From the IMG/VR virus record IMGVR_UViG_3300009181_000033, positions 233,895 through 297,894 of that record: a DNA stretch of 64,000 nt; one strand, given 5' to 3'. The stretch's first letter is position 1, and the number at the start of each line of letters is the position of its first letter. Under the pieces are notes generated by a model, which was not told the origin of the DNA, made no database searches, and saw only the letters and a list, made by a program, of their open reading frames with translations. Position numbers and translations under genes: made by a program. Below, piece after piece: positions 4,001-23,883 of this stretch.

Positions 4001-4119
4001 CCATTAAGGGCAGTGCCAACAATGCCTGCTGGCGTTCCGACGGGTGCTCGGGCCACTGGACCCGAGATGTCTATCTCTCTTGTTGTTACTCCTGCACTAC
4101 CGAATTTCAACTGTGCCAT
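1045..4119 (-). CDS. Contractile tail sheath protein (paralogue 2), T4 gp18-like
   Basis: N-terminal SAGVTTREID.S..GPAFVP..FG..YLRV; C-terminal PWFAPAG..RG, LY...INPI, WGQKTLQ..SALDRVNVRRLL, FEPN, P.KSIEFV.LDF. Confidence 0.95.
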   Translation of the reverse strand: MAQLKFGSAGVTTREIDISGPVARAPVGTPAGIVGTALNGPAFVPVTVGTIGDWYNKFGETDGKKFGPLAVFEWLRNAQAVTYLRVLGTGDGRERTDDGTVTNAGFVVGDNVPNPLSGVPGTKERNPFANNLGVAGRTYFLGCFMSESAGSTVFSEAGIQGYKSAVAAAAGSHAAAVPIVRGVLMAPSGVILTLSSSVAGISSAQPGSALVALQANIKGSQLGDVVLGNNASPKQEFSMFLNGHQGLTASYPNIITASFDVTSNNYFANVLNTDPNKIQEAGHYLYANWDIHPVLAAVTGTAVVESTAGAGATGTGKEQAAFLVTGSTARNYFDPNRIVPNYENFQDRFGHAKSPWFISQKFGGKPINLFRFHALDDGVGPAYQYKISIENLTPSNDPMNKYGNFTVVLREFNDRDLDKKTIANETFSGVNLDPSSDRYIAKVIGDIHAYYDFDREESAQKMVIQGNYENRSNYVRVEVHPDVENGFVDPVALPIGFRGIDHLVTSGSSPLSSSLKAVENAVLTVDSVFNHVVTPPLPFRKKITINDVDSAKENVEPKFYWGVQFEHPQTVLRQNGSILPNDGIKSFGKYYPDFAGFLTGSNSGQPDTAQLGIVDSDRFCNNMFSLEHLQVVTGTTGDADSNQWKSAVYVRDGNIISNNTNKTRALRVDDFLTNKSFVKYTTFMQGGFNGVNIFDKDSEEINNTAVHADMGATTNRGAENGPNVKAYMKAIEIMKNVVNMDIQLLAIPSIREPIVTDAAILAVEERFDAMYVMDIEQLDENYEQVEDEDQIPSVVNTINNFKNRTVDSSFAAAYFPDVLYRDPKGINVQAPPSVLVLGALALNDAVGHPWFAPAGFTRGALPQEALEPRVRLKQKDMDSLYDNSINPIVAFPGSAQSGTNPRGGIVVWGQKTLQVAASALDRVNVRRLLIEIRRQVRDIANTILFEPNRAATLARFSASVTPRLQRIQALSGLERFKVIIDSSTTTQDDIENNTIRGKIFVQPTKSIEFVSLDFVVANNLAQVQ

Positions 4120-4163
4120 TTATTTGCTCCATTGATAGCTAACTATTGTCTACCTAAAAAATT

Positions 4164-7100
4164 TCACACGAACTCAACGCCACTATTTGTAACAATGAAA
4201 TCAATTGCGATGAACTCGACAACCCTTGTGGGAACAACGACTATTCTTCCATTCAGGCGATTGAGATCGACATCTTCTTGGGTGTTATTGCTCTCATTCA
4301 TAACAACCTGGAAGGCTTCTACGCCGGCCTGAATTTGAATGAGACCCAACTGGAAAGAAGCATCGGCAACAAACTTATTACGAACGGCTGGCGTGTTTTG
4401 CTCGAACACTATGTTCTTTGCAATACCGGAAATGATTCTCTTTATCTCCAGCATCAACCTTCTCACGTTGACCCTATCAAGAGCCGAACGATTAATTTGT
4501 AGCGTCTTTTGACCAAAGATAACGAAACCCATCTTGGGGAAAGTGGCTATCGGATTGATGCGTGATTCGTAGAGGCGGTCCCTGTCAGAAACATTTAGTC
4601 TCACGCCGACATTTGTTACGAAGTCCAACGCTGCCCTGTTGAAACCAGCAGGGGCAAACCAAGGATAAGAAACTCTGTCGTTAAAGCCCAAAGCACCCAA
4701 GGCAGCAACTGAGGCCGGAACCCTTACTTTTCTCTTGTTGACGGTGTCATCGACAAAGACATCAGGATAGTATGTCGCAACGTAATTATTGTCAATGGTC
4801 CTTGCATCAAGTTGATTTGCTGTGCGCACTATGTTTGGTTTGACACTTGAATCATCATAAATGACTGCGTCATCATCGCTATATGAAGGAATGTCCATCA
4901 CGTGCATGGCCATTCCATAATCCCTAACCTTCTGCATGGTTCTGTCATTTATGTATACATCCCTGATACCTGGTATACAGATGATGTTCGTGTTCGCCTC
5001 GAGCGGGTTGGTCATTATGTCAACGGCGGACAAGTAAGAATTAACACCGTTGTTGTCTTCGTTAAAGCCAGACGGATTGACAGTGCCAAAACCTTCTGGA
5101 TAGAAAGTTGGTGATGCACCTGAATCGAAAGAAACTGACTTATCATTCAATCGACGAGCGTTTCTATCCAAGAAATTGGTTCCATCAAATCCACCATACA
5201 TGAAATTGGTGAACTTGGCATAAGCGGAGAACCTATTGAATTCAGAGGCGGTCCCTTGGGACAGCAACGTTGCGAAAGTAATTCTGTCTATCTGAGAAGT
5301 CCCATCATTGTTTAACACGTACGTGCTAGAGTCAAGTTTGGCATTTCTCACGTAGGCTGCCTGCCTCATGTGACTGTTCACCGAACTTGTGAGATCTGTG
5401 ATTGAAGAGTTGTAGAACGCGACATTTGCCAATGAGAACTTATTATTGTTCATGTCGTCGGCAAAAGATCCCGTCAACAACGAGTCTAGTTTCGATATTC
5501 CAACAAACTTGGTAAATGACTCGAGCAGAGAATTTTTCTCTGTGACAAGGTTGGCGTTTAACAACATGTTGTTTTTGACATCATTGGTGACGTCAGAACC
5601 AGTGCTGCTTCTCTCAAACTTAACGCCCCAATAGTAGGCTGGATTTGCTTGCTCTGCAGCACCAGGCTCACCGGTAAACGTTGGGGTTTGTTTCACTTCA
5701 CCTCTTGTAACCTTGAACCTAAGGGGGAGAGGTGGGAGGAAAGAACCAGACAGTGATGTTCCGGCAGAAGAAGAACAATGCAGTCTTGAAGCAGAAGGAT
5801 CGAGAGCACCATCGTTGGTCAAGGGGCTGGTTTTCAACAACTCTGGACCCCTGAATCCGAACGGAAGAGCGGTGGTTGGAATTTGCTCTTTTTCGTGCTC
5901 TTCGCTCATCTCAATTCTGACGTATCTTGAATTATTTGCATACTTGCCAAGGGCAACGATTCTCTTCTCGTTAGGATCAAGAGAATCAAAGTTATAGAAA
6001 ACTTTTCTATCTCCGATCATCTTGGCTATGTAATTTGGAGCCTTTGGATCCAAGGTGACATTTGAAAATTGTTCGAGAACCATAGGGCTCACGTCGGTAT
6101 CGTTCCAGTCCCTTATTTGAACATTGAACGTTCCATACTTGTTTGCTTCATTTGCAGACGCCTTGACGTTTGTGATAGAAATCTTGTAAAGGCTGTTTGC
6201 ATATTGACCATCGTCCAACGACTCGAACCTAAAAAGATCGTATTCTTTTGTTCCATACGGTTGTGATATAAAGAATGTGCTCTTGGGCGTGGTGTATCTC
6301 GTGTTGTAAGAACCAAACACCTTGCTAAATGGATTTCCGTGAAGACCGTCAGCGGAAGAACCGCTGAGTATCGCCACAGAGTTTCCTGCATCAACGTATG
6401 CAATTGTGTGATCAACAGCAAAATCTGCGTGTAGATAATGTTGTTCTTGATAGAACTTGTCAGGATCCCTGTTTAGAACCTTGGCAAAATAATCCTTGTC
6501 TGTTGGGTTGAATGAAGCGGTTAAAACCTTCACGCCGGAAAGTCCATCCATTTTTGAGAATGAATCACCTATGGAAGAAGAGATGATGAGTTTAAATTTC
6601 CCATCGGAGTGCATTGGGTGATCGTCGTTATTAACAACCTTCACTGCCACCAAGCTAGAATTGGATCCCGTAACCATGATTCTTGCTGTAGAGGGCGTCA
6701 TGATGAGGCCTCTTATCAAGTCGGCAGATGTAGAATTTGTTATGGTGTCATTGTTGGTAAAATCAGCAACTGCAACGTCTTCATTGGGTCCAAACGTATG
6801 TTTGGCAGCCAAAAACTGAACCCTTCCAGTAGTTGAATCGTCCAAAACAAAGCCGGCATTATTGACAACACCTTTTGTCAAAGTATCACTCAGGTGTTGA
6901 GCTGTAGTGTTGGCTCCTGCACCCAGCACCCTGAGATATGTCAAGGATGATCTGTTCTTTAAAAATTCGCAAACCGCGTATGGTCCAAAATGCTTTGGAT
7001 CAAGATTGCCAAAGTTTTGCACAAATTCATTAAAATTTGCTACAGTAAATGGCACAAAGGCGGGGCCTTTGTTTGATGTTCCTATGATTCCTGCAGGGAC

Positions 7101-7184
7101 GCCTACTGGTCCAGATGTCCTGGGTGATGATAAATCTATTTCGCGTTCATAAAAATTTGGCGACTTAAAGGTCTGCTCTGACAT
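4164..7184 (-). CDS. Contractile tail sheath protein (paralogue 1), T4 gp18-like
   Basis: SPNFYEREIDLS..KGPAFVP; PWFAPAGFNR; INPIATFP; FGQKTLQ..SALDRVNVRRL; PTRVVEFIAIDF; SD AAGGAG. Confidence 0.95.
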   Translation of the reverse strand: MSEQTFKSPNFYEREIDLSSPRTSGPVGVPAGIIGTSNKGPAFVPFTVANFNEFVQNFGNLDPKHFGPYAVCEFLKNRSSLTYLRVLGAGANTTAQHLSDTLTKGVVNNAGFVLDDSTTGRVQFLAAKHTFGPNEDVAVADFTNNDTITNSTSADLIRGLIMTPSTARIMVTGSNSSLVAVKVVNNDDHPMHSDGKFKLIISSSIGDSFSKMDGLSGVKVLTASFNPTDKDYFAKVLNRDPDKFYQEQHYLHADFAVDHTIAYVDAGNSVAILSGSSADGLHGNPFSKVFGSYNTRYTTPKSTFFISQPYGTKEYDLFRFESLDDGQYANSLYKISITNVKASANEANKYGTFNVQIRDWNDTDVSPMVLEQFSNVTLDPKAPNYIAKMIGDRKVFYNFDSLDPNEKRIVALGKYANNSRYVRIEMSEEHEKEQIPTTALPFGFRGPELLKTSPLTNDGALDPSASRLHCSSSAGTSLSGSFLPPLPLRFKVTRGEVKQTPTFTGEPGAAEQANPAYYWGVKFERSSTGSDVTNDVKNNMLLNANLVTEKNSLLESFTKFVGISKLDSLLTGSFADDMNNNKFSLANVAFYNSSITDLTSSVNSHMRQAAYVRNAKLDSSTYVLNNDGTSQIDRITFATLLSQGTASEFNRFSAYAKFTNFMYGGFDGTNFLDRNARRLNDKSVSFDSGASPTFYPEGFGTVNPSGFNEDNNGVNSYLSAVDIMTNPLEANTNIICIPGIRDVYINDRTMQKVRDYGMAMHVMDIPSYSDDDAVIYDDSSVKPNIVRTANQLDARTIDNNYVATYYPDVFVDDTVNKRKVRVPASVAALGALGFNDRVSYPWFAPAGFNRAALDFVTNVGVRLNVSDRDRLYESRINPIATFPKMGFVIFGQKTLQINRSALDRVNVRRLMLEIKRIISGIAKNIVFEQNTPAVRNKFVADASFQLGLIQIQAGVEAFQVVMNESNNTQEDVDLNRLNGRIVVVPTRVVEFIAIDFIVTNSGVEFV

Positions 7185-11400: not shown

Positions 11401-11661
11401 TTACCTTTGAGGACTTGATTGAAGATTTTGACTCAAGTTCAACCAGTTATTTTGTTCTTTTTGAACCAAATCATTTATCTTTTTTGACTCCTGTTGTGCC
11501 CAGGATCTATATACTTCCTGCTCCAATTCTTCCTGTTCTTTTTTTAGAGCTGAAAGGATGGGTTTCCTAAATTTATCCAATAAATGCTGTTTGGTATTTG
11601 CGTCTCTAATTAATGTTTCATAAATCTCAAGCATTTCAGATGCCGTGAAGGCCACATTCAT
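11401..11661 (-). CDS. Hypothetical protein
   Basis: 86 aa, ATGA overlap with upstream gene. Confidence 0.6.
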   Translation of the reverse strand: MNVAFTASEMLEIYETLIRDANTKQHLLDKFRKPILSALKKEQEELEQEVYRSWAQQESKKINDLVQKEQNNWLNLSQNLQSSPQR

Positions 11662-12272
11662 TGAGTGTCACCAATTCCATAGGCATAGTCAAGTTTAAAT
11701 ATATTTGCCCAAGCCTTACATAGTCTCTTATAAGTAAAGACTTCCCAATCTTCACCATCATGAAATTCTATAGTCTTATCAGTTACCTTGATGGTGGTGA
11801 TCTCTGGAAGAAGAATTGAGCCTTCATTGATCAAAACATCGACTGCGTTCCTAAAATCTACATCCTCAAACTGAACTGTGACCTTCTCACCAATGGAATT
11901 TTTAACATCCTGGGCTGGTAAATCCTGCAAGTCAGAAGCCGGCACTAAAAAGTGATGCTCGATTTTTTCATTATCGGGCTCTTCGACTGCTTCCCTTCCC
12001 GTCTCCTCATCTTCATCTTCATCTTCATCTTCATCTTGATCTTCATCTTCATCTTGATCTTCATCTTCATCTTCATCTTCATCTTGATCTTGATCTTGAT
12101 CTTGATCTTGAGTCTGGCTTGGTCGACAAGCGCTCTCTTCACCGGTTAAAAAAATCTCTATGTTTGACATCATGTTTGATATCTGTTCCTTTGTGGCAGG
12201 ATCCCAATCGCTACCTGAAATCTGAAAGAGAAGAGAGTATAGAAATAGTGACTCGGTTTTGGAAAGATTCAT
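11658..12272 (-). CDS. Hypothetical protein with (DQ/DE)n acidic tract
   Basis: Start moved to MNLSK (12272) because SD AGGAGA precedes it and a terminator lies just upstream. Confidence 0.65.
   Translation of the reverse strand: MNLSKTESLFLYSLLFQISGSDWDPATKEQISNMMSNIEIFLTGEESACRPSQTQDQDQDQDQDEDEDEDEDQDEDEDQDEDEDEDEDEETGREAVEEPDNEKIEHHFLVPASDLQDLPAQDVKNSIGEKVTVQFEDVDFRNAVDVLINEGSILLPEITTIKVTDKTIEFHDGEDWEVFTYKRLCKAWANIFKLDYAYGIGDTQ
12007..12110. repeat. Hexamer microsatellite (TCTTCA/TCTTGA)n encoding Asp-Glu/Asp-Gln
   Basis: About 17 contiguous hexamers, directly visible. Confidence 0.95.
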
Positions 12273-12287
12273 TAGATGTTCTCCTAT

Positions 12288-12318
12288 AAAAAGGACGGGA
12301 ACTTTCGTTCCCGTCCTT
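12288..12318 (-). terminator. Intrinsic terminator
   Basis: AAGGACGGGAAC-GAAA-GTTCCCGTCCTT-TTT. Confidence 0.85.
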
Positions 12319-12347
12319 GCCACATGTCAAAGCAAAATTAATATATT

Positions 12348-12686: not shown

Positions 12687-12729
12687 AAAAAAATAAATCG
12701 AGCGGCATTTCTACCGCTCGATTTATTTT
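12687..12729 (-). terminator. Intrinsic terminator (16-bp perfect stem)
   Basis: AAAATAAATCGAGCGG-CATTTCTA-CCGCTCGATTTATTTT. Confidence 0.85.
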
Positions 12730-12741
12730 CACATCTTCAAA

Positions 12742-13725
12742 TCACTTGATAATTCCAGCCAGCTTCTGCCAACGCTCAACAACAACAGAGCCATCTCTCT
12801 GATAGCCCGAAGTCTGTTGTTTCTTTTTATCTCCCTTTTCACCAGTCAAAGCATTGACTTCGGGTGAATATGGGGGATTGATGTCCATTTTTCCTGATTC
12901 AATGTCTTTCTTCACTGCAGCCAACTCACTTGGCTCGATTGCCGGCATGTCAACCTTGGGCGGCATCCATCCTTCAACAGCCCTAGTGTCTGCTGTGGAG
13001 GCCCAATTTTCTTTGACATGTTCAGCTGCGGCCTCGAGCGTATCAAACCCATTAGCCTGGAATGCTTTAAGGATTTCTTCAGGCACAGGAAGGAACTTTC
13101 CTCCCTTGGAGGCCATCTCCACAAACTTATCTGCGACAGCTTCTGGTGTGAGTGAATCAAGATCAGTGTCAGAAGGCTTGCCTTTTCCACCGTGAGCAGC
13201 TGTCCAAACATTAAGAACACCAACCAATTGCTTGCCAGGAAGATCAATCTGCAAACCACCGACTGAAGCGCTGGGGTCAACCATCAGGGTGGCTGCCCAG
13301 CGATGATGGCCGTCCATGATGTGATTGTCATTAGAAATAATGGCCCCCAAATCACCACCAGCTCCGCCGCTGAAGCTTCCCATCTTACCCATCATTTGAA
13401 TGGCCATTCCAACAAATTTGCCAAAGTCCATGGTTGTTTGGGTTGCTCTCAAGCTGTCAGCAGGTGAATTTGTCTGGCCGCCGGAAGCAACATCGTCCTC
13501 GGCATCTTCGTCTTCTAGTCCTTTTGAAGCCAAGGCCTTTGCGATAGAAGGATCAACTTGACTCAGGTTCGTAGGGAAAAGACTAGGGTCAATTTTAGCA
13601 GGTGAAGCATCCTCAAACAACGACAAAAGAGAGCGAGAATGCCCCTTGGGGGAACGTATTTCCTTCAAAGCTTTTCTTGCTTCAGATGCTATCAAATTTC
13701 TCAGTTGTAATTCTGTCAATCTCAT
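12742..13725 (-). CDS. ParB/Srx-like domain protein with head-targeting N- and C-terminal motifs
   Basis: L.ATQ...IISNDNHIMDGHHRWAA; N-terminal MRLTELQLRNLIASEA; C-terminal ERWQKLAGIIK. Confidence 0.7.
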   Translation of the reverse strand: MRLTELQLRNLIASEARKALKEIRSPKGHSRSLLSLFEDASPAKIDPSLFPTNLSQVDPSIAKALASKGLEDEDAEDDVASGGQTNSPADSLRATQTTMDFGKFVGMAIQMMGKMGSFSGGAGGDLGAIISNDNHIMDGHHRWAATLMVDPSASVGGLQIDLPGKQLVGVLNVWTAAHGGKGKPSDTDLDSLTPEAVADKFVEMASKGGKFLPVPEEILKAFQANGFDTLEAAAEHVKENWASTADTRAVEGWMPPKVDMPAIEPSELAAVKKDIESGKMDINPPYSPEVNALTGEKGDKKKQQTSGYQRDGSVVVERWQKLAGIIK

Positions 13726-14066
13726 TTCTTCTTTTCCTCTCCGTCCTCAGACGAAACCTTCTTCAAAACGTTCATGGCCTTAACAGTGTCCTCCGGAGAA
13801 GCCTGCATCAGCTTGGCAAAAATATCACCAAACACGGAATTGTCGAGGCTGTTTCTCTTTCCAGCCCGTAGATTGGAAACAGCGGTCTTCAACTTGCCAA
13901 CATCTGCTCCCAAAGCGTCTGCCATTTTTTTAATATCAACATTGCCTTCAACATCAGCGGTCTCGCCACCCACCTTTGTTGGGCCGGCCTCAAAAATATT
14001 GTGGAGAGTCATCTTTTGCTTTTCTGATTCAACTAATTTTCTCAAAAGTCTGGCCGTTAATTTCAT
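13722..14066 (-). CDS. Putative internal head protein
   Basis: N-terminal MKLTARLLRKLVESE; ATATTTAT directly upstream. Confidence 0.55.
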   Translation of the reverse strand: MKLTARLLRKLVESEKQKMTLHNIFEAGPTKVGGETADVEGNVDIKKMADALGADVGKLKTAVSNLRAGKRNSLDNSVFGDIFAKLMQASPEDTVKAMNVLKKVSSEDGEEKKK

Positions 14067-14087
14067 AAAAATAAATATTCAACAAAA

Positions 14088-14435
14088 TTAATTTTTTGGC
14101 CCGTGTGACCCTTTTTTTCGCAGCACCAACGGATTTTCTTTAACCAACCAAAACTCCTTGTCAATGGGCGGATCTTCCCCTTCACGAAACCACATCAACT
14201 TTCTACCGCCAGTAGATGCATAAACACCTATTATCGTTATGTGCCCCGCGTGGATCAGGTCGTGACAAGAGTGACAGACAATCGCAAGGTTTTCGTTATT
14301 GTTGGTACAGCGCGGATCACACCTGGGAATTATATGGTGGACATTGAGCGCATCAGGATTTGAAAAGTCACAGATCTCGCAACTATCCTTCAACAGACCT
14401 TCCTGTCCACTCCTCCTACGACTCTTTCGCTTCAT
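14088..14435 (-). CDS. HNH endonuclease
   Basis: CEIC...VHHIIP...NNNENLAIVCHSCHDLIH; start MKRKS after AGGTGA. Confidence 0.85.
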   Translation of the reverse strand: MKRKSRRRSGQEGLLKDSCEICDFSNPDALNVHHIIPRCDPRCTNNNENLAIVCHSCHDLIHAGHITIIGVYASTGGRKLMWFREGEDPPIDKEFWLVKENPLVLRKKGSHGPKN

Positions 14436-14442
14436 GGGAAAA

Positions 14443-14907
14443 TCACCTGCCAGACATTGCAGCCTTAAAAACAAGACTGCCGATCGCATGGTGCCTGCCG
14501 TCCACCTGATAAAAGAGGTTCACGCCCTTCTCCAATGCCCACAGGATTAACCAATTTAATGTCTTAACATCAAGCTTGCTCCTTGCCTCGGCAACCTCGT
14601 AATGTGTCAAATCGGCGCGGGATGGAAGGACTATCTTGGATATAATGACACCCGACAAATCAGGCCTCATCCACTCCGGGAACACATCCGCCTCGACCCT
14701 CCAGGAACAGTTGTACGACTTGCATGTGTTGGGTCGACCCTCGTAGTCGGTGCACTTTCCACCAGCAAGAAAGAAACAAGGTCGACCAGGATACATCTGG
14801 TGCCCCTTTATATCGGCAGACAACCAGCCCTCACAACAACCCGTGCAAGGACCACAAGCACGAGAAGAATCTTGCAAAACAGGCAATGACGTCACTTTAT
14901 CTGTCAT
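14443..14907 (-). CDS. YkgJ-like CxxCxxCC cysteine-cluster protein
   Basis: CGPCTGCC...CFFL...CTDYEGRPNTCKSYNC. Confidence 0.8.
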   Translation of the reverse strand: MTDKVTSLPVLQDSSRACGPCTGCCEGWLSADIKGHQMYPGRPCFFLAGGKCTDYEGRPNTCKSYNCSWRVEADVFPEWMRPDLSGVIISKIVLPSRADLTHYEVAEARSKLDVKTLNWLILWALEKGVNLFYQVDGRHHAIGSLVFKAAMSGR

Positions 14908-14992
14908 GCCACAATCATATGCGGTATTTCGAACTTGTCGATGGCCTCTCGAATATATTCTTCAAGTAACACTATTGACATGACATTAAATA

Positions 14993-16444
14993 CTACATGC
15001 ATGTGCTAATTCTGAATATATGTGATCCACAACCATATATCCTTGAAACTTTCGCTGCAAGGGCAACTTGTCTCTCTGTTAAACCTAGTTGTGCACGATA
15101 TCTAAATCGATCGTAACGTAACTCATTATCTGTGTACCAATAATCAGGTGCTGTGCAACCGACTCTTTCAAAACCAGCAGAAACGTATCCATTGCCAGTT
15201 CCAACTCTTCGATCAACATACGTCATGATCTGCGAATATCCATTCTTGGAAGACCAATCACGAGCCACCTTTAGCAACTTTGATAATCCGCCAGGAACAG
15301 ACATTCCCTTCTGTGTACTAAATCTAGCAATCTCAATGGAATTTTCATATTTTCCGCCATGACGAGGCACGCGTAAAGACAAAGCTGCAACGATATTGCC
15401 ATTTCTGTCACGCAGACCCCAGCAAACTTTGCTGGGTGTGTAACCAGCAAGATGTGTCGCATTAAAGAACGCTTTCTGTTCTTTCGTAGATAGCTCAATA
15501 ACTGTGGTTGACCAAGTCTTACATTTTGAAGGGTGAAATCCTAGCCTATGTTGAATCATTGATTTTATGATGTCTTGCTTGTCACGCCACTCATCTTCAA
15601 ATATTTGCAACAAGCTTATACCGACTGATTCAGCCATTTCAGCTTTCACAGAATGGGACTTCTTATCAAATTCTTCAGTGGGCTTGCCTGCTTCACTGTG
15701 CCAAAACAAACCATGACACTCAATTCCAAATTTTTTAGATGGAACATAAATGTCAATCTCTTTCGGTGATAATGTTTTTCTGTCACCGCTTATTGCGTCC
15801 GCAGATAAAGAACGAACATACTCAAATACAGATAACTCCCAATTTGATTTGCCGACTGGACAACATCGATAACAACGGCTACCTCTTTCAAACGCCTGCA
15901 ATGTTTTTTGTTGTCTCTCTCCGCATTTAAGACACTCGAATGTGAGATATTGCTGCTGCCTTGAATGATATTCATTCAAAGAAGTAATCAGCTTAAACTC
16001 AAGTGATCTCTCACTAATTCTTTCATTTAATGCCGATGAAAACAGTGTTTTATTTTCCGATATTCTTTTTATAGTCTCTTGTGCGTGACGTTTGCCATAA
16101 AAATGGTTGCCTTCACCGGTTGCCCGCTCAGCTGCAGCGGCTATTCTGACATCCGTCTCTTTTGTCTTCCCTCTGTTCCAGGCCTCGTTTGCACCGCCTC
16201 GAGCCCCTCCTTCTTTCATCGCAAGACGAGCGTGCTCTTTACAATACTTCTTAAAAGTAAAAGCAACATATCGAACATCAGCACCACACTCAGCGCAAAC
16301 AGGTTGAATTCCTCCATGCTGCGCTTGAACTGTGTAATCAAATGAAGACAACTTGTGCTCAATTCTCACATGATCAGAAAATCTCTTCAGATCAACATTT
16401 GAATAGTCGCACAACTTACACTTCATGTCGTTAACGGCTTGCAT
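14993..16444 (-). CDS. Hef-like homing endonuclease: C2H2/Zn fingers + NUMOD3 + Vsr-like nuclease + GNAT/Mom-like domain
   Basis: CKLC..H...H; WNRGKTKETD; GEGNHFYGKRH; EIDIYVP..FGIECHGLFWHS..QIFEDEW; EIARF...VPGGLSKLL..TYVDRR. Confidence 0.75.
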   Translation of the reverse strand: MQAVNDMKCKLCDYSNVDLKRFSDHVRIEHKLSSFDYTVQAQHGGIQPVCAECGADVRYVAFTFKKYCKEHARLAMKEGGARGGANEAWNRGKTKETDVRIAAAAERATGEGNHFYGKRHAQETIKRISENKTLFSSALNERISERSLEFKLITSLNEYHSRQQQYLTFECLKCGERQQKTLQAFERGSRCYRCCPVGKSNWELSVFEYVRSLSADAISGDRKTLSPKEIDIYVPSKKFGIECHGLFWHSEAGKPTEEFDKKSHSVKAEMAESVGISLLQIFEDEWRDKQDIIKSMIQHRLGFHPSKCKTWSTTVIELSTKEQKAFFNATHLAGYTPSKVCWGLRDRNGNIVAALSLRVPRHGGKYENSIEIARFSTQKGMSVPGGLSKLLKVARDWSSKNGYSQIMTYVDRRVGTGNGYVSAGFERVGCTAPDYWYTDNELRYDRFRYRAQLGLTERQVALAAKVSRIYGCGSHIFRISTCM

Positions 16445-16476
16445 GAACTAATAATTATATACTATTCTGCAATTGT

Positions 16477-16513
16477 AAAAAACAAAAAGGGCTGCCCTTT
16501 TGAGGCAGCCCTT
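16477..16513 (-). terminator. Intrinsic terminator after major capsid gene
   Basis: AAGGGCTGCC-TCAAAAG-GGCAGCCCTT-TTTGTTTTTT. Confidence 0.9.
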
Positions 16514-16544
16514 AATGAGTCATCCCTTCAGATGACGTTCAAGT

Positions 16545-18416
16545 TCAGATGACATTCATGTCGAGAACGGTGACGGTGCCGTAGAAGTCCGAGCGGACCA
16601 TCTTCTTGCCGTAGCGGGTCATCACACCCTTACGAGGTGTGAAATCCTCAGGCGCGAAGATTGTAGGGGTCACAATCAGGGGCACGTAAGGAGCGTAGAC
16701 GTATCCGGTCTCGAGGTAGCTGCCACCCTTGTAGCCGACGAGGATCTTGTTGCGAACGAAGTAAGGATCCTTGTAGACGGTGAAGCGGTTGGAGAGGGTG
16801 CCGATGGCCTCTGCACCGATGGTGAAGGGGCTAGCGACCTGGCCCTCGCCGTCCATGGAGAACTTGGGCTTGTAGAGAACTGAGCTCTCGAGGATGGTGG
16901 CGACATCGGGTCCGGTGACCATGAAGTTCGCAGAACCACGGAGTGTCTTGCGGTGGATGGTGTTGGCGACGTCGATGATGGTCTCGATGAGAGTCTCGTA
17001 CCACTCGCGGACGGTGCCTGTGAACTGAGGGCCGATCTGGTATTGGTCGGCTAGTGTTACGCGGCCACCGGTTGTCTTGTTGACGAAGCGACCGGGTGAG
17101 CGGCTCCAATAGTAGTTGGCGCCATTGGCTTGGCTGACTAGGTCGTTGAGGATCTCACGGTCGATCTCGAGGGCGATCTGCTCTGAGAGGATTGAGGTGA
17201 GCTCCACCTCGGCGTCCATGCTGTGGTACGCGTTGAGGTCCTGAGCGAGCTCGGGTGACCACTTGGCGCGTAGCTTGCGGGTCTCGGCGGTGATGCTGAT
17301 GGCCTCGATCTTGATGTCGATCTCTGGGATGACTGGTGAGGGGGTCGAGCCGAAGTCGGACTCGAAGGAGGGGACGGTGATGGTGGCACCGCTGGTGCTG
17401 TCCACGTTGAGCTTTTGGTCAAGAACGAATGTGAACTTGCCGGTAGCGGTGGGAGTAAAGGCAGCAACGCCGTTGGCACCCTTCACGAGCATGAGAACGT
17501 GAGTGCCGTTGAGGGCATTTGGTGTAAATGTGAAGGCCGAGTTGTCCCAGTCACCGCGCTTGTTGAGGCGGCGAAGGTTCTTGATGCCTGTGCCGCCTTG
17601 GTAGGTGTCGCCCCAGGCGTCGGCGCCGGTGATGCCGGCGTGGAGAGCGATCTGGTTGACGGCGAGGCGGTCAATGGTTGAACCGATTGAGTCAAGCTTG
17701 ACAATCTCGAACATCGCATCGAGCTGACCGAGGTCGAGCGCAGTCTCAACCTGGGCATCGAAGTCGGCGTAGCGGGCGTTAGAACCTGAGAAGTCGAGGG
17801 CTGATCTGAGAACGCCGCCTGCAACCCAAGCTCCTGTACCGCTCCATGAACCGGAGGCGGCGACAGAGGAGTTTGTGAGGTCGACTGTTAGGTTCGAGCC
17901 GGTAACGCGTGAGTAGCCGACGTTAACGAGGTCGTATTGGCCGCCGGTGGCTAGAGAGCCGCTCTGAACGCCTCTGCCGGTGGGGTTGTTGTAGATTGAC
18001 TGGCCACGGGTGTAGGTCGAGGTTGAGTCGGACCCTGGGACGCCAACATTGCTACCGTATGTGTAGTCGAGGTAGAAGATGAGGCCTGATGGGAGACTCA
18101 TTGGTTGAATTGAGACGAGCTCGTTGGCAACGAGGCCACCGAATACGCGGCGAACGATTGGGAACGCGATGTTGGAAAAGCCCTGGATCTGACCGGAGCC
18201 GGCGAGGTTGCCACCGCCGGTTGAAAGGCCATTGCTCTCCTTAAGGACCTGGGCAGCCTGGTTCTCTAGGAGCTGTCCCATCATCTCACGCTTCTGGCCG
18301 TCGAGGCCACGGAGGAGGCCTGTGCGGCTCCACTTCTCGGTGAGGCGTGCGCGCTCGGCACCGACGTGCTTCTCGCGGATGCCCTGAGCTAACTGATCTA
18401 AACTAAAATACTTCAT
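16545..18416 (-). CDS. Major capsid protein, T4 gp23-like
   Basis: LLENQ, PIVRRVF..L.ANELVSIQPMSLPSGLIFYL, A.TRKLRAKWSPELAQDLNAYH..DAE.EL..ILSE.I.LEIDREI, GYVYAPYVPL, F.PRKGVMTRYG. Confidence 0.97.
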   Translation of the reverse strand: MKYFSLDQLAQGIREKHVGAERARLTEKWSRTGLLRGLDGQKREMMGQLLENQAAQVLKESNGLSTGGGNLAGSGQIQGFSNIAFPIVRRVFGGLVANELVSIQPMSLPSGLIFYLDYTYGSNVGVPGSDSTSTYTRGQSIYNNPTGRGVQSGSLATGGQYDLVNVGYSRVTGSNLTVDLTNSSVAASGSWSGTGAWVAGGVLRSALDFSGSNARYADFDAQVETALDLGQLDAMFEIVKLDSIGSTIDRLAVNQIALHAGITGADAWGDTYQGGTGIKNLRRLNKRGDWDNSAFTFTPNALNGTHVLMLVKGANGVAAFTPTATGKFTFVLDQKLNVDSTSGATITVPSFESDFGSTPSPVIPEIDIKIEAISITAETRKLRAKWSPELAQDLNAYHSMDAEVELTSILSEQIALEIDREILNDLVSQANGANYYWSRSPGRFVNKTTGGRVTLADQYQIGPQFTGTVREWYETLIETIIDVANTIHRKTLRGSANFMVTGPDVATILESSVLYKPKFSMDGEGQVASPFTIGAEAIGTLSNRFTVYKDPYFVRNKILVGYKGGSYLETGYVYAPYVPLIVTPTIFAPEDFTPRKGVMTRYGKKMVRSDFYGTVTVLDMNVI

Positions 18417-18458
18417 TTCTTAATCTCCTGTGTTGTAGTTGGTAAAAATTTGAAACAA

Positions 18459-20528
18459 TCACTTAACAATGCCCGCGAGACGTGCCCAGCGCTCGGCCTC
18501 GAAACCTTCGTTGAGGTTCGTGGCGGCCGCACGGGGGGACGGACGCGAGGATGAACCAATGACTCCGTAGCTGGTTGACTCTGACAACTGCTTGGATGAG
18601 GTACCACGGAGTGCCTTGGTGAGGCTCTCGTACACAAGCTTGACTTCACGCTCATTGCGGGCCTCGTCGAGGCGCTCAATCACTTCGGCCTTCTGGCGCT
18701 TAGTGAGCGACTCATTCTGGAGGAGCTTGTTTGTGTAGAGTAGCTTAGCATTGAACAGATTTGTTTCTGCCAACTTAGCGCGGAGAATAGCGGCCTCCGC
18801 AACCGTTTTTCTGGTCTCGCCATTGATGACGTTACCTCTGCGGACAGCCTCTGTGAGCATGCCCTGGAGACGGCGGGTGCGCATCACCGACTCATTAAAC
18901 TTGCGAGCGTAGAAGTTGTAGGCCTCTTGCATCTTCTTGGCCTGCTTGGCCTTCTTCTGCTGCTCTTGCTTTGCCTTCTGGGCTGCGCCCTTCTGGCCTT
19001 TCTTCTGCTGTTCATTAGCCTGCTTCTCGGCCTGTTTGGCCTGGGACTCGGCTTGCTGCTTGCCTTTCTTGGCTTGTTGTGCCTTCTGCTTGGCCTCTGA
19101 CTGGAGACGGGCTTCGGCACGGAGATTGCGGCGGAGTGACTCTACAGTCTTGCCGGGTTCGTTTGACTGATCGCTGGGCTGCTCGGTGTCAGCGCCGTGC
19201 TCGGCGTCCTCGCCGTGGGCCTGATAAACCTGATCGAGCTCATCGAGCTCATCGAGCTCATTTGCGCTCTTGTCATCAGTGTGCTTGGAGGCGTGGGACT
19301 CTTCCTCGTCTTGGCCTTCGGTTGTGAGGTCGATGTCGACGAATGGATCGCCAAGGTCATCATCCTCGAAATCATCGGAAACATCGCCTGGGCCATGGCC
19401 CCAGCTCTGTGCCTTGGTCTCCGCCTCTTCACGGAGGGCTCTCATGCGACCAATCTCGCGGCGTAGCATGTTTTCATCAATCTCAACGACAACATCATTA
19501 CCAAGTCCGTGTGATTCCATTGTAGCTCCTTCTAAATCAAGATCTTCGTCTTCATCTTCTCCGCCTTCGACCTCTTCATCTCCACCGAGATCAAGGTCTT
19601 CCCCGCCTTCATCTTCCCCGCCTTCGGCCTCTTCATCTCCACCGAGATCAAGGTCTTCCCCGCCTTCATCTTCCCCGCCTTCTTCACCTTCGGCCTCCTC
19701 ACTGGGTGGCTCTGTGATCAAATCGACACCAATGTCGTCAAGGCTATCCTCGAGCTCGTCGGGTAAGTTGGTTAGCTTGAGTGTGAGTTCTGATTCAGAC
19801 AAATTTCTTCTATTTCTTTTCATTTTCTGCTCCGTGAGCTTGGTAAGGGTTGAATAACAATCTTTCAAAACCTTCAAATTCAGCTGTTTTTTATGCGAAT
19901 TGTCAGTGTTTTCGTTTAAGTGCTTATACATATCGCGAACTTTAGCAATAGTTGCAGAAAGACGATCAGAATATCCTCTGGATTCTCTAATTATTTTTCC
20001 GGCGCCTCTCAAAAGTTTGACGTTCTGTACAATGGATCGAATACTAGATTCGATAACTACACTTTTCTTTGATGACATGAGCATACCTAATTTTTCAGCT
20101 GCCTCCCTGCTCAATTCGTATTCTCCAGAAGGGGTTCTTAAAGCATCTAAATCCAAAGTCACTTTCCCTTCTTCATCGGGCATTGATATTGCATCAGCAA
20201 TGGCATCATGGGTCCCGAGTGCCACACTCGAATCAAGTGGAACATCATCAAAATCATCGACAGACGAACCTGCCGGCAGAGCTGTGTCATCTATTGCAGA
20301 CGCAGCTGCTGCAGTCTCAGGAAATTCGTCCATAAGCAGTTTTTCATTGTTGGCCTCAGACTCCTCAGAATTCTCAGCCTCAGAGCTCTCACCAAGCAAT
20401 TGGTGTTCTATGAGATCACGAATACGAGGCGTCACTGCCTCCAGCAAGGCTCTTTTGGCGTTATCTTCTGCCACTTCTTTTAATTTTTTAACATCGGCCA
20501 ACGCCTCTTCATAAAGCTGCTTAGACAT
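18459..20528 (-). CDS. Prohead core/scaffold protein, T4 gp22-like
   Basis: Directly upstream of MCP; acidic and coiled-coil; many LxE sites; NLFNAKLLYTNKLL..LT..QK; C-terminal ERWARLAGIVK. Confidence 0.8.
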   Translation of the reverse strand: MSKQLYEEALADVKKLKEVAEDNAKRALLEAVTPRIRDLIEHQLLGESSEAENSEESEANNEKLLMDEFPETAAAASAIDDTALPAGSSVDDFDDVPLDSSVALGTHDAIADAISMPDEEGKVTLDLDALRTPSGEYELSREAAEKLGMLMSSKKSVVIESSIRSIVQNVKLLRGAGKIIRESRGYSDRLSATIAKVRDMYKHLNENTDNSHKKQLNLKVLKDCYSTLTKLTEQKMKRNRRNLSESELTLKLTNLPDELEDSLDDIGVDLITEPPSEEAEGEEGGEDEGGEDLDLGGDEEAEGGEDEGGEDLDLGGDEEVEGGEDEDEDLDLEGATMESHGLGNDVVVEIDENMLRREIGRMRALREEAETKAQSWGHGPGDVSDDFEDDDLGDPFVDIDLTTEGQDEEESHASKHTDDKSANELDELDELDQVYQAHGEDAEHGADTEQPSDQSNEPGKTVESLRRNLRAEARLQSEAKQKAQQAKKGKQQAESQAKQAEKQANEQQKKGQKGAAQKAKQEQQKKAKQAKKMQEAYNFYARKFNESVMRTRRLQGMLTEAVRRGNVINGETRKTVAEAAILRAKLAETNLFNAKLLYTNKLLQNESLTKRQKAEVIERLDEARNEREVKLVYESLTKALRGTSSKQLSESTSYGVIGSSSRPSPRAAATNLNEGFEAERWARLAGIVK
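19561..19682. repeat. 57-bp tandem repeat (GGEDLDLGGDEE[A/V]EGGEDE) in scaffold
   Basis: ccgccttcg unit recurs at 19561 and 19618; slightly more than two copies. Confidence 0.9.
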
Positions 20529-21671: not shown

Positions 21672-21917
21672 TCAAATGTTTCCACGGAGACGACGGCGTG
21701 TTTCAGCTATTCTTGCGAGACGACGGCGTAATCTTGTCTCCTCAATTTTTAATGCCTTCATGTAATCAATTGTTTTTTCTAAAGCCTTTTCGCTCCCAAC
21801 CTCGCCTGCATCAAGCTCCTCTGTGTCCTTGGCACGATCCTCAGTGGACTCCATATCGCCAAACTTGGAGACCTCCTGGAGTATGATTTTACGAAGCATG
21901 GTATTTGTCAATTTCAT
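21672..21917 (-). CDS. Putative small prohead core protein
   Basis: MKLTNTMLRKIILQEV motif; Arg-rich C-terminal coiled coil; SD GGAGA. Confidence 0.6.
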   Translation of the reverse strand: MKLTNTMLRKIILQEVSKFGDMESTEDRAKDTEELDAGEVGSEKALEKTIDYMKALKIEETRLRRRLARIAETRRRLRGNI

Positions 21918-21972: not shown

Positions 21973-22389
21973 TTATTTCTTAAGAGAAGAACCCATAAAA
22001 GCAAGTTCTGCCCACTTTGAAGTCACTTCTTCTCCAAAGATTTCATTGGGTTCAGCTGAGGCCAATGCTTGTTCGACTAAACCACCAGCTTGAGAAGTAA
22101 ATTTGCCCTTTGTATCTCCTTCAAGCATTTTTGGAAGTGTGGATGCAGCAGTGTCAGCCAAAATCATTTCCATTATTTTGTTTCCCCCCGACTCCTTTTT
22201 TATGGCATTAGAAAGATAAGGTGTTATTTTTCTTTGGGGTTGTTGTAAAGCACTTGAAGTTGTGGACTTGGTAGAATGAATAACCTGATTTCCTCGTGAG
22301 GAATTTGGCGAGCCTATTCCTTCGCTAAGTATTTCAACCAAACATTCCTTTACAATATTTTTTAATTCAAATTTTGACAATTTCATCAA
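21973..22389 (-). CDS. Putative prohead core protein
   Basis: MKLSKFELKNIVKECLVEILSEG; C-terminal SKWAELAF. Confidence 0.6.
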   Translation of the reverse strand: MMKLSKFELKNIVKECLVEILSEGIGSPNSSRGNQVIHSTKSTTSSALQQPQRKITPYLSNAIKKESGGNKIMEMILADTAASTLPKMLEGDTKGKFTSQAGGLVEQALASAEPNEIFGEEVTSKWAELAFMGSSLKK

Positions 22390-22410: not shown

Positions 22411-23022
22411 TCACTTCCTTGTGGCCAATATGTCATTAATGATTCTGTCAATTCTATCAGATTTGTTAAAAACTTTTCTTAATTCAAACGAATTAATTGT
22501 TTTCCCCTCAGGAAGCATAAAGGCTCCAGGAGTAGAGGGCTCAGAAACGTAGTCCCAACATATCAATTGAAAATCATCCTGAACGATGTGATAATCTCCT
22601 TGTTTTTTTGTGGAACCGACTCCCCTAGAAGATATTCCCAGCTTGACACCTGATTCCACCAAGGACTGCAGTATCTTTCCTGATGGTGTGTCCAGAAGCT
22701 CCACTGTCCCATAAACAACCCCCTTTTCAAGATGAGCTTCTTTGACTATGTGAGAAACATTCTTGAGGTTGACGACAGAAGAATCTGGGTGATCCAATTC
22801 GCCGAGGGCCCTATTTTCAGAAATAAACTTTTGATAATTTCTAATTTCTCTCTCGAGAACGGCAGTGGGATATATCCTTCCATTTTGGTTCAAGGTGTCT
22901 GATTTTTGAAGGATGCCCTTCATGACAACCTTGCCACCATTCTTCTCACGAGATTCTTTGATCATCTCGGGAGTATAGTCAAAAACTTCATACGAATTTA
23001 GAAGCCTTAAATCTTGTCCCAT
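22411..23022 (-). CDS. Prohead protease, T4 gp21-like
   Basis: NQNGRIYP, ALGELDHP (His), LGISSRGVGS (Ser), WDYVSEPSTPGA (Asp). Confidence 0.95.
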   Translation of the reverse strand: MGQDLRLLNSYEVFDYTPEMIKESREKNGGKVVMKGILQKSDTLNQNGRIYPTAVLEREIRNYQKFISENRALGELDHPDSSVVNLKNVSHIVKEAHLEKGVVYGTVELLDTPSGKILQSLVESGVKLGISSRGVGSTKKQGDYHIVQDDFQLICWDYVSEPSTPGAFMLPEGKTINSFELRKVFNKSDRIDRIINDILATRK

Positions 23023-23025
23023 AGC

Positions 23026-23883
23026 TTACTCCTTCGACTCCAATTCCTCTTTTAATCTGGAATATAACATAAATCTGGTAACGGTTGAATCGTCCACGTC
23101 TCCCAAGTTTTCTTGAATTAGGCACGATTTAACTTCATCAAGTTTGCTCTTCACATACTCGTTCTTTTGATCCTCGGTCTCGTATTGCTCTATGAGCTCC
23201 AATAAATTATCCTTGGCTTCATGTAGCTTCATCTTGATTGATGACATATCGTCAGAAGCAGTTGAAAAAGCGTACGCCCTTATGAGACTCTTCTGTTGTT
23301 CATTAAGCACAGAATCGTATTTTTCATTCAACTTCTTTGTCATAACCTTCATCAGCAATCTCGCTGAACCATTTGTGTCCTCGGTTATTGTTTGATCGAC
23401 AGGGGCTGACTTTTCAGTAACTAACCACTTCATCAATTGATCTTCATATTGTGCCATCTTCAAGAGATCTTTATTGGGAGATCTCCATTCATTCATCAAT
23501 GTTTGAATTGTGGCAAGCGCTCTATATTCATTAACATGTTGATCATAAAAATTATCATCATTAATGACGTGATTAATGTGCTTGATCAACAATGACTTTT
23601 CACGATCGATTGCTGCGTGATTCATGGACACAGCGGCAGACTTCGCTTCCCTGAGGATTGAGGCAGCCACGTGCTCGGAAGAAACAGTTGTCTTTACCAA
23701 AGAATTAATTAAACGAAATTCTTTATAAAGATTAGTTCCTGGTTTGTAGTGCCTCTTAAGGATCCTAAGGGCACCAGCAGACCTCTTTTTGTCATCCTCT
23801 ATCAAAGATTTTGAAATGGTCCTTACCAAGAACTCATAAAGAAGCATTGAATTTCTTTTCTTATTATGGTTCCTTCCGCTCAT
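23026..23883 (-). CDS. Hypothetical helical protein between portal and protease (probable prohead core component)
   Basis: HNKKRN N-terminus; occupies the position of T4 gp67/gp68. Confidence 0.6.
   Translation of the reverse strand: MSGRNHNKKRNSMLLYEFLVRTISKSLIEDDKKRSAGALRILKRHYKPGTNLYKEFRLINSLVKTTVSSEHVAASILREAKSAAVSMNHAAIDREKSLLIKHINHVINDDNFYDQHVNEYRALATIQTLMNEWRSPNKDLLKMAQYEDQLMKWLVTEKSAPVDQTITEDTNGSARLLMKVMTKKLNEKYDSVLNEQQKSLIRAYAFSTASDDMSSIKMKLHEAKDNLLELIEQYETEDQKNEYVKSKLDEVKSCLIQENLGDVDDSTVTRFMLYSRLKEELESKE

What the first reader, a model, noticed from the sequence alone, without database searches (positions are those of the whole stretch)
12742..13725. ParB/Srx-like enzyme carrying both head-targeting tags
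The DGHHRW ParB/sulfiredoxin core is flanked by the N-terminal helix and by a near copy of the scaffold's C-terminal RWxxLAGI motif. It is co-transcribed from a late-type promoter with another tagged protein, and no ParA or HTH is present. Inference: a packaged, injected nucleotide-using enzyme (NTPase, nuclease or anti-defence effector) rather than a partition protein.
Basis: partly seen in the sequence, partly recalled or inferred. Interest (0 to 1): 0.6.

Follow-up and report, generated by a model that had tools for sequence, protein, structure and literature searches.

The report
Capsid-addressed ParB/Srx-fold phage enzyme
A giant T4-like phage encodes a nucleotide-binding-type enzyme that carries two address labels, one at each end; comparison with related phages indicates that these labels load it into the virus head, but no experiment has shown this.

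Summary
Window 12742-13725 (-) encodes a 327-aa protein with three parts. Residues 1-38 are a leader that starts with a helix motif found at the N-terminus of 13 or more ORFs of this 298-kb uncultured phage. Residues 39-295 are a conserved acidic core whose residues 76-185 model as a ParB/sulfiredoxin fold, with DGHHRW invariant. The protein ends in ERWQKLAGIIK, almost the same as the scaffold's last residues.

New comparative evidence:
- In 116 of 119 homologues the leader ends in [LIVMF]-x-E, the T4 gp21 cleavage consensus, exactly where the conserved core begins.
- The leader changes with the phage lineage. In one 326-kb phage it is a T4-CTS-like leader shared with at least 9 neighbouring genes. 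The core stays the same.
- The RWxKLAGI peptide ends the scaffold in six divergent T4-like phages. It also occurs as an N-terminal leader, directly before an IxE or LxE site, on other proteins.
- A HAD-like enzyme carries both tags.

Best reading: a protease-processed internal head protein loaded through two portable tags. Its chemistry is unknown, probably nucleotide-dependent and closest to the SerK/Srx branch. It is not a partition ParB: no ParA, HTH or Pfam ParB hit was found. Packaging, ejection and activity are all untested. I rate it a new variant of a known kind.

The parts
12742..13725 (-). Gene for the 327-aa dual-tagged ParB/Srx-fold protein (P0002)
   Evidence: ORF list; 271 metagenomic homologues, none with a Pfam domain; AF2 model with pLDDT 88
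13612..13725 (-). Leader (propeptide), residues 1-38. It holds the N-tag helix (residues 1-15) and all three L/I-x-E sites of the protein (P1 = residues 5, 22 and 38). The predicted maturation cut is after Glu38.
   Evidence: tag shared by 13 or more ORFs; site positions; 116 of 119 homologues have [LIVMF]-x-E at this boundary; residues 25-37 have pLDDT below 50
13171..13500 (-). ParB/sulfiredoxin-fold domain, residues 76-185, with the SQT box (Q96), the GGD loop (123-125) and DGHHRW (138-143, nt 13297-13314)
   Evidence: Domain model pLDDT 90. The eight best PDB representatives, Z 6.4-7.8, are all ParB/Srx members; unrelated folds score 2.5 or less apart from one row at 4.0. The first 47 Foldseek ranks are all ParB/Srx. 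Invariant columns.
12841..13170 (-). Conserved helical C-domain, residues 186-295, with invariant N240, M260-P261, G278, D281 and the PPY motif; no known fold was assigned
   Evidence: The whole core matches only uncharacterised viral clusters in the ESM Atlas (TM 0.70-0.80).
12745..12777 (-). C-tag, residues 317-327 (ERWQKLAGIIK), a near copy of the scaffold's C-terminus
   Evidence: The same peptide ends the scaffold in six phages.
12689..12730 (-). Intrinsic-terminator-like hairpin with a U-run that closes the two-gene unit
   Evidence: -26.8 kcal/mol, z -8.5, 0 of 200 shuffles fold as well
13722..14066 (-). 114-aa ORF with the N-tag, overlapping the target gene by ATGA; function unknown. 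Its homologue in relative L018 lies downstream of the ParB-like and HAD-like genes.
14072..14078 (-). ATATTTA box of the ATAnTTA upstream motif family (promoter-like, class unknown)
18459..20528 (-). Putative scaffold protein (689 aa, acidic, coiled-coil-like) between the protease and capsid genes; its last 11 residues (nt 18462-18494) are the model for the C-tag. It has 19 L/I-x-E sites.
   Evidence: Assigned by position and composition; no family hit.
16545..18416 (-). gp23-type major capsid protein
   Evidence: phrog_138 E 9e-73; tblastn hits to T4-like capsid genes
22411..23022 (-). gp21-type (S77) prohead protease, the presumed enzyme that cuts at L/I-x-E
   Evidence: phrog_207 E 2e-49; the orthologue in L018 carries PF03420
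21672..22386 (-). Two small N-tagged ORFs (21672-21917 and 21973-22386) between the protease and scaffold genes, in the position of T4 head-core proteins

Best explanation
The gene encodes a cargo protein of the phage head. Its first 38 residues are a capsid-targeting propeptide of the T4 CTS kind: an amphipathic helix that at least 13 proteins of this phage share. This leader would bring the protein into the scaffolding core, and the gp21-type protease would then remove it by cutting after Leu-Phe-Glu38. Its last 11 residues copy the conserved C-terminal peptide of the scaffold protein. That peptide probably binds the assembling shell or core in the same way as the scaffold, giving a second handle. 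What would stay in the head is an acidic core of about 32 kDa: a ParB/sulfiredoxin-fold nucleotide-binding domain plus a family-specific helical domain. The core would leave with the DNA at infection and use a nucleotide in an early step, more likely as a phosphotransferase or NTPase of the SerK/Srx type than as a DNA clamp. Shown here: the fold, the motifs, their statistics, their modular exchange between lineages, and the conserved cleavage consensus. Inferred: incorporation, cleavage, retention, ejection and chemistry.
For: Fold: domain model hits at Z 6.4-7.8 are all ParB/Srx (sulfiredoxin, SerK, PadC, Atu1540, SbnI, pNOB8 ParB-N, KorB), followed by a sharp drop. Foldseek PDB ranks 1-47 are all ParB/Srx. 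BFVD top hits are named ParB/Sulfiredoxin, E 3e-10. The nearest named clusters by language-model features are ParBc_2 and ParB_N. DGHHRW aligns to the same motif of SerK.

Leader: [LIVMF]-x-E sits at the leader/core boundary in 116 of 119 homologues, 108 of them with L or I. This matches the gp21 consensus L/I-X-E (PMC9026906). All three sites of the target lie in residues 1-38. Across 108 homologues the leaders hold 201 such sites against 66 expected, and the cores 78 against 161 expected.

Leaders change with the genome. In L001 the homologue and at least 9 neighbours start with a leader like T4 IPII/IPIII. L004 has a third type. In this genome the tag also sits on two small ORFs between the protease and scaffold genes.

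C-tag: it is the scaffold C-terminus in this phage, L018, Flavobacterium phage immuto, Microcystis phage Mel-JY01, L003 and Rhodothermus phage RM378. The same peptide is N-terminal, directly before an LxE or IxE site, in homologues P0097, P0103, P0111, P0050 and P0116 and in immuto protein P0122. A HAD-like enzyme carries both tags, and in L018 it lies next to the ParB-like gene.

Position: the gene lies directly downstream of gp23 in distant T4-like phages. Precedents: T4 IPs and Alt (both Alt termini are processed) and P1 DdrB, a ParB-like domain protein incorporated into the head (PMC5512222).
Against: There are no virion proteomics, because the genome is an uncultured IMG/VR record and no cultured phage has a close homologue. 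No Pfam ParB family reaches threshold for any of 31 members. Some homologues (the L003 group) lack both tag types yet keep the LxE boundary, so a conserved LxE could also be a structural feature of the core. The core is acidic (pI 4.5-4.8), unlike the basic DNA-associated T4 internal proteins. Strong conservation and a fixed position argue against a fast-evolving anti-defence role. RNA evidence could not be obtained.
Confidence: 0.6

Rival explanations
1. It is a head-assembly or maturation factor rather than an injected effector. It would be a conserved accessory of the scaffolding core that works inside the prohead, for example nucleotide-dependent remodelling or preparing the head for DNA. 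It is then either lost or kept as a structural internal protein with no role in the host cell.
For: The core is strongly conserved (35-83% identity over 120 clusters, invariant active-site-like residues). It has a fixed place next to gp23 in distant T4-like phages. It shares the scaffold's own terminal peptide.
Against: The core is depleted in L/I-x-E sites (78 against 161 expected), whereas the scaffold has 19. That pattern fits a protein meant to survive the protease, as T4 IPs and Alt do. In L001 and L019 the gene is not next to the capsid gene.
Confidence: 0.2
2. It is a cytoplasmic enzyme that is never packaged. The terminal helices would serve oligomerisation, chaperone binding or localisation, and the likeness to the scaffold end would reflect a shared partner outside the head.
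For: There is no direct evidence of packaging. Some homologues lack the tags.
Against: The leaders end in the protease consensus in 116 of 119 homologues. One lineage uses leaders like the experimentally proven T4 CTS. The tag also sits on ORFs inside the head-core gene block. The C-tag is the scaffold terminus in six phages.
Confidence: 0.12
3. It is a canonical ParB-type partition or DNA-clamp protein that binds a parS-like site and works with ParA.
For: Only the shared N-domain fold and the arginine-containing motif.
Against: No ParA in the genome, no HTH or ParB Pfam family, an acidic core, a lytic-type T4-like genome with terminal repeats, and a gene inside the structural module.
Confidence: 0.02

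Closest known systems
T4 internal proteins IPI-III and Alt with their capsid targeting sequence (CTS)
   Same: A short N-terminal propeptide shared by unrelated cargo proteins and ending in L/I-x-E, in a genome with a gp21-type protease. The cargo varies while the label is constant within a genome. Alt is processed at both termini.
   Different: The leader here is longer (38 aa, three sites) and has a different sequence. A second label at the C-terminus copies the scaffold's end. The cargo is a conserved enzyme family rather than small variable proteins. Nothing has been tested experimentally.
Phage P1 DdrB and the 'DdrB-like ParB' domains of polyvalent proteins (Iyer et al. 2017, PMC5512222)
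   Same: A ParB/Srx-superfamily domain without ParA, encoded beside virion genes; P1 DdrB is incorporated into the head.
   Different: No detectable sequence relation (hhalign probability 0.1%). This is a single-enzyme protein, not a polyvalent giant, and targeting would be by T4-type tags rather than the Dar system.
SerK/SbnI free serine kinases and sulfiredoxin (HTH-less, ATP/ADP-using ParB/Srx enzymes; Pfam ParBc_2)
   Same: The same fold (Z 6.7-7.8), the same DGHHRW(A) motif as SerK, no HTH or dimerisation domain, and nearest named clusters by language-model features. These proteins use the fold as an ATP-binding module (PMC12704722).
   Different: No Pfam hit, a different C-terminal domain, unknown substrate, and the kinases' catalytic residues were not mapped here.
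Scaffold C-terminal coat-binding peptides (P22, herpesvirus) and encapsulin cargo-loading peptides (own knowledge, not tested here)
   Same: A short terminal peptide that docks a protein to the inside of an assembling HK97-fold shell and works on foreign cargo.
   Different: Here the partner of the peptide is unknown, and natural reuse of the scaffold peptide on enzymes, at either terminus, has not to my knowledge been described for T4-like phages.

Membership tests
ParB/sulfiredoxin superfamily (fold level) | Alpha/beta domain of about 100 residues with the ParB-N/Srx topology | tested here: met
   Domain model pLDDT 90. The eight best PDB representatives are all ParB/Srx at Z 6.4-7.8, 74-99 residues aligned; unrelated folds score 2.5 or less apart from one row at 4.0. 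Foldseek ranks 1-47 are all ParB/Srx, best E 1.6e-3.
ParB/sulfiredoxin superfamily (fold level) | Conserved arginine-containing phosphate-binding motif at the strand-to-helix junction | tested here: met
   MDGHHRW is invariant in 31 of 31 sequences. It sits where strand 60-63 meets helix 65-74 of the domain model and aligns to the DGHHRWA of SerK.
ParB/sulfiredoxin superfamily (fold level) | Match to a curated sequence model (Pfam ParB_N PF02195 or ParBc_2 PF08857) | tested here: not met
   No hit for the target, for any of 31 homologues at E up to 5, or in the genome. Membership rests on structure and motif only.
ParB/sulfiredoxin superfamily (fold level) | Nucleotide binding or hydrolysis | not testable with these tools
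   Needs purified protein.
Canonical ParB partition proteins / CTP-dependent DNA clamps | HTH DNA-binding domain and C-terminal dimerisation domain | tested here: not met
   No such Pfam family. The helical C-domain gives no clear match to a solved DNA-binding domain.
Canonical ParB partition proteins / CTP-dependent DNA clamps | Partner ParA ATPase encoded in the genome | tested here: not met
   PF13614 search of the complete genome: best E 0.13, below cut-off.
T4-type CTS-targeted internal head proteins | N-terminal leader shared by several unrelated proteins of the same phage | tested here: met
   13 or more ORFs; 15 matches against 0.34 expected. Lineage-specific leaders in L001, L004 and L018.
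T4-type CTS-targeted internal head proteins | Leader ends at an L/I-x-E site, and a gp21-type protease is encoded | tested here: met
   sites; protease, phrog_207 / PF03420; consensus from PMC9026906.
T4-type CTS-targeted internal head proteins | Protein present in the virion with the leader removed, and delivered to the host | not testable with these tools
   Uncultured phage; no cultured close homologue.
DdrB-like ParB domains (P1 Dar system) | Sequence similarity to the P1 DdrB ParB-like domain | tested here: not met
   hhalign of the family profile against P1 DdrB: probability 0.1%, E 0.48, and only over an unrelated 21-residue stretch.
SerK/SbnI free serine kinases | Catalytic acid/base residues and serine-binding site | not tested
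   Only the fold and the DGHHRW motif were compared.

The most novel reading that the evidence does not exclude
A wide clade of T4-like phages, from the Rhodothermus phage RM378 to freshwater giant phages, uses the last ~10 residues of its own scaffold protein (RWxKLAGI) as a portable capsid-loading peptide. Placed at either end of a protein and combined with lineage-specific CTS-like leaders, it loads enzymes such as this ParB/Srx-fold protein and a HAD-like phosphatase into the head. This would be a natural cargo-loading system comparable to that of encapsulins.
Probability: 0.4. Interest if true: 0.75.

Novelty: new variant of a known kind. Interest (0 to 1): 0.62.

Why it matters
Packaged proteins are the first phage molecules to meet the host. 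Outside T4, P1 and the phiKZ group we rarely know which proteins are packaged or how they are addressed. This finding gives a sequence-only rule for predicting head cargo in a large, mostly uncultured clade of T4-like phages: a lineage-specific leader ending in L/I-x-E, and/or the scaffold's terminal peptide. It also identifies a widespread, unannotated enzyme family as recurrent cargo; the homologue search returned 271 protein clusters, and the matching Atlas clusters hold about 900-1,200 members. In addition it offers a short natural peptide that could be tested as a loading tag for foreign proteins. Finally it adds a virion-associated branch to the ParB/Srx fold, whose range beyond chromosome segregation is under active study (PMC12704722).

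Tried and rejected
- Pfam gave nothing for the target or for 31 homologues. PHROGs gave only an unknown-function family (phrog_2859).
- A profile search of PDB sequences gave only the short DGHHRW motif match to SerK, at a non-significant E.
- The whole-protein Foldseek PDB search was weak (best E 0.026). Folding the domain alone was needed for a clear result.
- tblastn against cultured phages found no full-length homologue, whether the query was the target or distant homologue P0105. A 25-aa C-tag query was too short to find anything.
- hhalign against P1 DdrB found no relation.
- Complex prediction on the capsid protein plus the C-terminal 40 residues returned 'no answer' (score 0.02). I do not count it for or against binding.
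- The T4 late promoter TATAAATA is not enriched. AATATTTA as an exact 8-mer is at chance level in the window; only the looser ATAnTTA family is enriched upstream of genes.
- Two homologue contigs (for P0118 and P0091) had no DNA on file.
- The idea that the C-tag is a recent DNA duplication of the scaffold's 3' end is rejected, because the codons differ.

Full report
Context. The window is the last 64 kb of a single 297,894-bp contig. It is an IMG/VR virus record with direct terminal repeats, rated 100% complete. The window carries a T4-type structural module on the minus strand:
- terminase and portal
- a gp21-type protease (22411-23022)
- small ORFs
- a 689-aa acidic, coiled-coil-like protein in the scaffold position (18459-20528)
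- a gp23-type capsid protein (16545-18416)
- two homing-endonuclease-like genes
- the pair 13722-14066 and 12742-13725
- neck and two sheath genes

The nearest cultured capsid relatives are Flavobacterium phage immuto, Microcystis phage Mel-JY01 and Rhodothermus phage RM378. All are below 45% identity.

The observation.
- DGHHRW is residues 138-143.
- The N-terminal helix motif occurs 15 times in the six-frame translation of the genome, against 0.34 expected. Twelve of these sit directly at a starting Met.
- The C-terminal motif occurs four times against 0.01 expected: at the end of the scaffold, of this protein and of a 303-aa HAD-like ORF elsewhere in the genome, and once inside a 313-aa ORF.
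- The codons under the three terminal copies differ, so the peptide is maintained by selection, not by recent duplication.
- The 114-aa upstream ORF has the N-tag and overlaps the target by ATGA. A strong hairpin with a U-run follows the target.

The promoter claim is weaker. TATAAATA is absent. The ATATTTA box at 14072-14078 belongs to an ATAnTTA family that is 12-30x enriched in the 60 nt upstream of genes and rare elsewhere. That family also precedes both sheath genes, the scaffold gene and a head-core ORF. Its class and the transcript ends are unknown, because RNA data could not be obtained.

The fold. No Pfam model matches the protein or any of 31 homologues. An AlphaFold2 model built on 31 homologues is confident from residue 40 to 295. 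Folding residues 76-185 alone gave pLDDT 90. Against 48,161 PDB representatives, the eight best matches to that domain are all ParB/Srx members: plant and human sulfiredoxin, SerK, PadC, Atu1540, SbnI, pNOB8 ParB-N and KorB. They score Z 6.4-7.8. Osa and Spo0J follow at about 4, as does one non-ParB chain (1wkv, O-phosphoserine sulfhydrylase, Z 4.0); all other unrelated folds score 2.5 or less. In the Foldseek PDB search, ranks 1-47 are all ParB/Srx. In the viral structure library the top hits are named ParB/Sulfiredoxin (E 3e-10). The nearest named clusters by language-model features carry ParBc_2 or ParB_N. The invariant MDGHHRW sits at the strand-helix junction and aligns with the same motif of the serine kinase SerK. 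So the fold is ParB/Srx. Within it the protein looks most like the HTH-less, ATP/ADP-using enzymes, which a recent survey treats as a separate use of the fold (PMC12704722). It is not a partition ParB: there is no HTH, no ParA in the genome and an acidic core of pI 4.5-4.8.

The leader is a propeptide. I aligned 120 homologues. The residue equivalent to Glu38, the last one before the conserved core, is Glu in 117 of 119 sequences. The residue two positions before it is Leu or Ile in 108, and [LIVMF] in 116. This is the L/I-X-E specificity of T4 gp21 (PMC9026906), and this genome encodes a gp21-type protease. The target's only three L/I-x-E motifs have their Glu at residues 5, 22 and 38; there are none in residues 39-327. 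Over 108 homologues the leaders hold 201 such motifs against 66 expected, and the cores 78 against 161 expected. These sequences are related, so the numbers are descriptive and not independent tests. The scaffold has 19 sites, and the capsid protein has four in its first 60 residues, as in T4. Leader length varies from 3 to 53 residues, and residues 25-37 of the model are disordered.

The leader is an address that changes with the phage.
- In a 326-kb uncultured phage (L001), the homologue and at least nine neighbouring genes all start with a leader of the form MK..(T/S)(Y/F).EF(L/I)NE. This closely resembles the proven CTS of T4 IPII/IPIII, which I read from the T4 record.
- Locus L004 has a third leader type, shared by the homologue's neighbours.
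- The close relative L018 has the same type as this genome, on the ParB-like protein, a HAD-like protein, the homologue of the 114-aa ORF and the small head-core ORFs.

The core therefore stays constant while the label follows the genome. That is what is expected of cargo addressed to each phage's own head core (T4 precedent).

The C-tag is the scaffold's terminal peptide, and it is portable. The protein in the scaffold position ends in this peptide in this phage, L018, immuto, Mel-JY01, L003 and RM378. It does not in the cyanophage P-SSM7 gp22. In several homologues of the target the same peptide is not C-terminal. It lies in the N-terminal leader, immediately followed by LKE or I-x-E and then the core. 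An unrelated 154-aa protein of the cultured phage immuto has the same arrangement. A HAD-like enzyme (DxDxT motif, weak DUF2608 match) carries both tags, and in L018 it lies directly after the ParB-like gene. The partner of the peptide is not known. A complex prediction with the capsid protein gave no verdict and is not used as evidence.

Mechanism proposed. The protein is made late and joins the scaffolding core through its leader and/or its scaffold-like C-terminus. The protease removes the leader after Glu38. The protease-resistant acidic core stays in the head and leaves with the DNA. The chemistry is unknown. I favour a nucleotide-dependent phosphotransfer or NTPase reaction over DNA clamping or nuclease action, because of the SerK/Srx-like motif, the missing HTH and the acidic surface. 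This is the weakest step.

The family's strong conservation and its place directly after gp23 in distant T4-like phages make a conserved head or early-infection function as likely as a variable anti-defence role.

What is known and what is new. Already known:
- CTS targeting in T4, and processing of both Alt termini.
- ParB-like domains in packaged proteins, such as P1 DdrB. The target shows no sequence relation to DdrB.
- An automatic ParB/Sulfiredoxin label on a viral homologue.

New here:
- the definition of this family as recurrent head cargo
- the conserved cleavage boundary
- the exchange of leaders between lineages
- the reuse of the scaffold's terminal peptide at either end of enzymes

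All of this is comparative inference.

Noticed in passing
genome G000:C1:165413-166324 (+), outside the window (locus L016): A 303-aa HAD-like ORF (DxDxT motif; DUF2608 E 8e-5) has an N-tag-like helix and ends in SRWNKLAGLK, so it is a second dual-tagged enzyme. In relative L018 its homologue lies directly after the ParB-like gene (L018:10974-11942).
   Followed up: partly
genome G000:C1:196257-197189 (-), outside the window (locus L017): A 310-aa ORF holds an internal copy of the C-tag module (VLVERWQKLAGLL), followed by about 50 more residues. No family hit.
   Followed up: no
window 23880-27008 (-): The portal ORF is 1042 aa. HNH-endonuclease families match residues ~187-280 and portal families match ~588-867. 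It may be an intein or an endonuclease fusion within the portal gene.
   Followed up: no
window 14088-16444 (-): Two homing-endonuclease-like genes (HNH, 133 aa; NUMOD3/HNH-type, 483 aa) and a 154-aa Cys-rich ORF are inserted between the capsid gene and the tagged pair. Relative L018 has different mobile genes at the same place (TnsA-like, denV-like).
   Followed up: partly
window 16001-20000: The capsid and scaffold genes have 54% G+C against about 40-45% for their surroundings.
   Followed up: no
window 1045-7184 (-): Two adjacent tail-sheath paralogues of about 1,000 aa each.
   Followed up: no
window 11658-12323 (-): A 221-aa ORF with a long Gln/Asp/Glu repeat (QD and ED dipeptides). The annotated start is GTG; L018 has a 166-aa counterpart without the repeat.
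   Followed up: no
whole genome; for example window 4140, 7223, 10391, 10621, 14072, 20562, 21945 (-): ATAnTTA heptamers are 12-30x enriched within 60 nt upstream of genes, yet occur at less than half the frequency expected from base composition genome-wide (151 against about 339). This is a likely phage promoter element of unknown class.
   Followed up: partly
L003:5524-5751, L007:3143-3370: Distant T4-like phages that carry the family, and Microcystis phage Mel-JY01, encode a ribosomal protein S21 homologue inside the head gene block, between the protease and scaffold genes.
   Followed up: no
L019:6475-8745: In an 88-kb relative, a 756-aa protein with a nucleotidyltransferase-like HxGH motif lies three genes upstream of the ParB-like gene. 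Atlas and BFVD list viral proteins in which a similar ParB/Srx domain occurs together with a cytidylyltransferase-like domain.
   Followed up: no
genome, position not located: One N-tag-like match (KLSPLQLRRIIKEEV) is not preceded by Met in the six-frame translation. It could be an internal copy or an unusual start.
   Followed up: no
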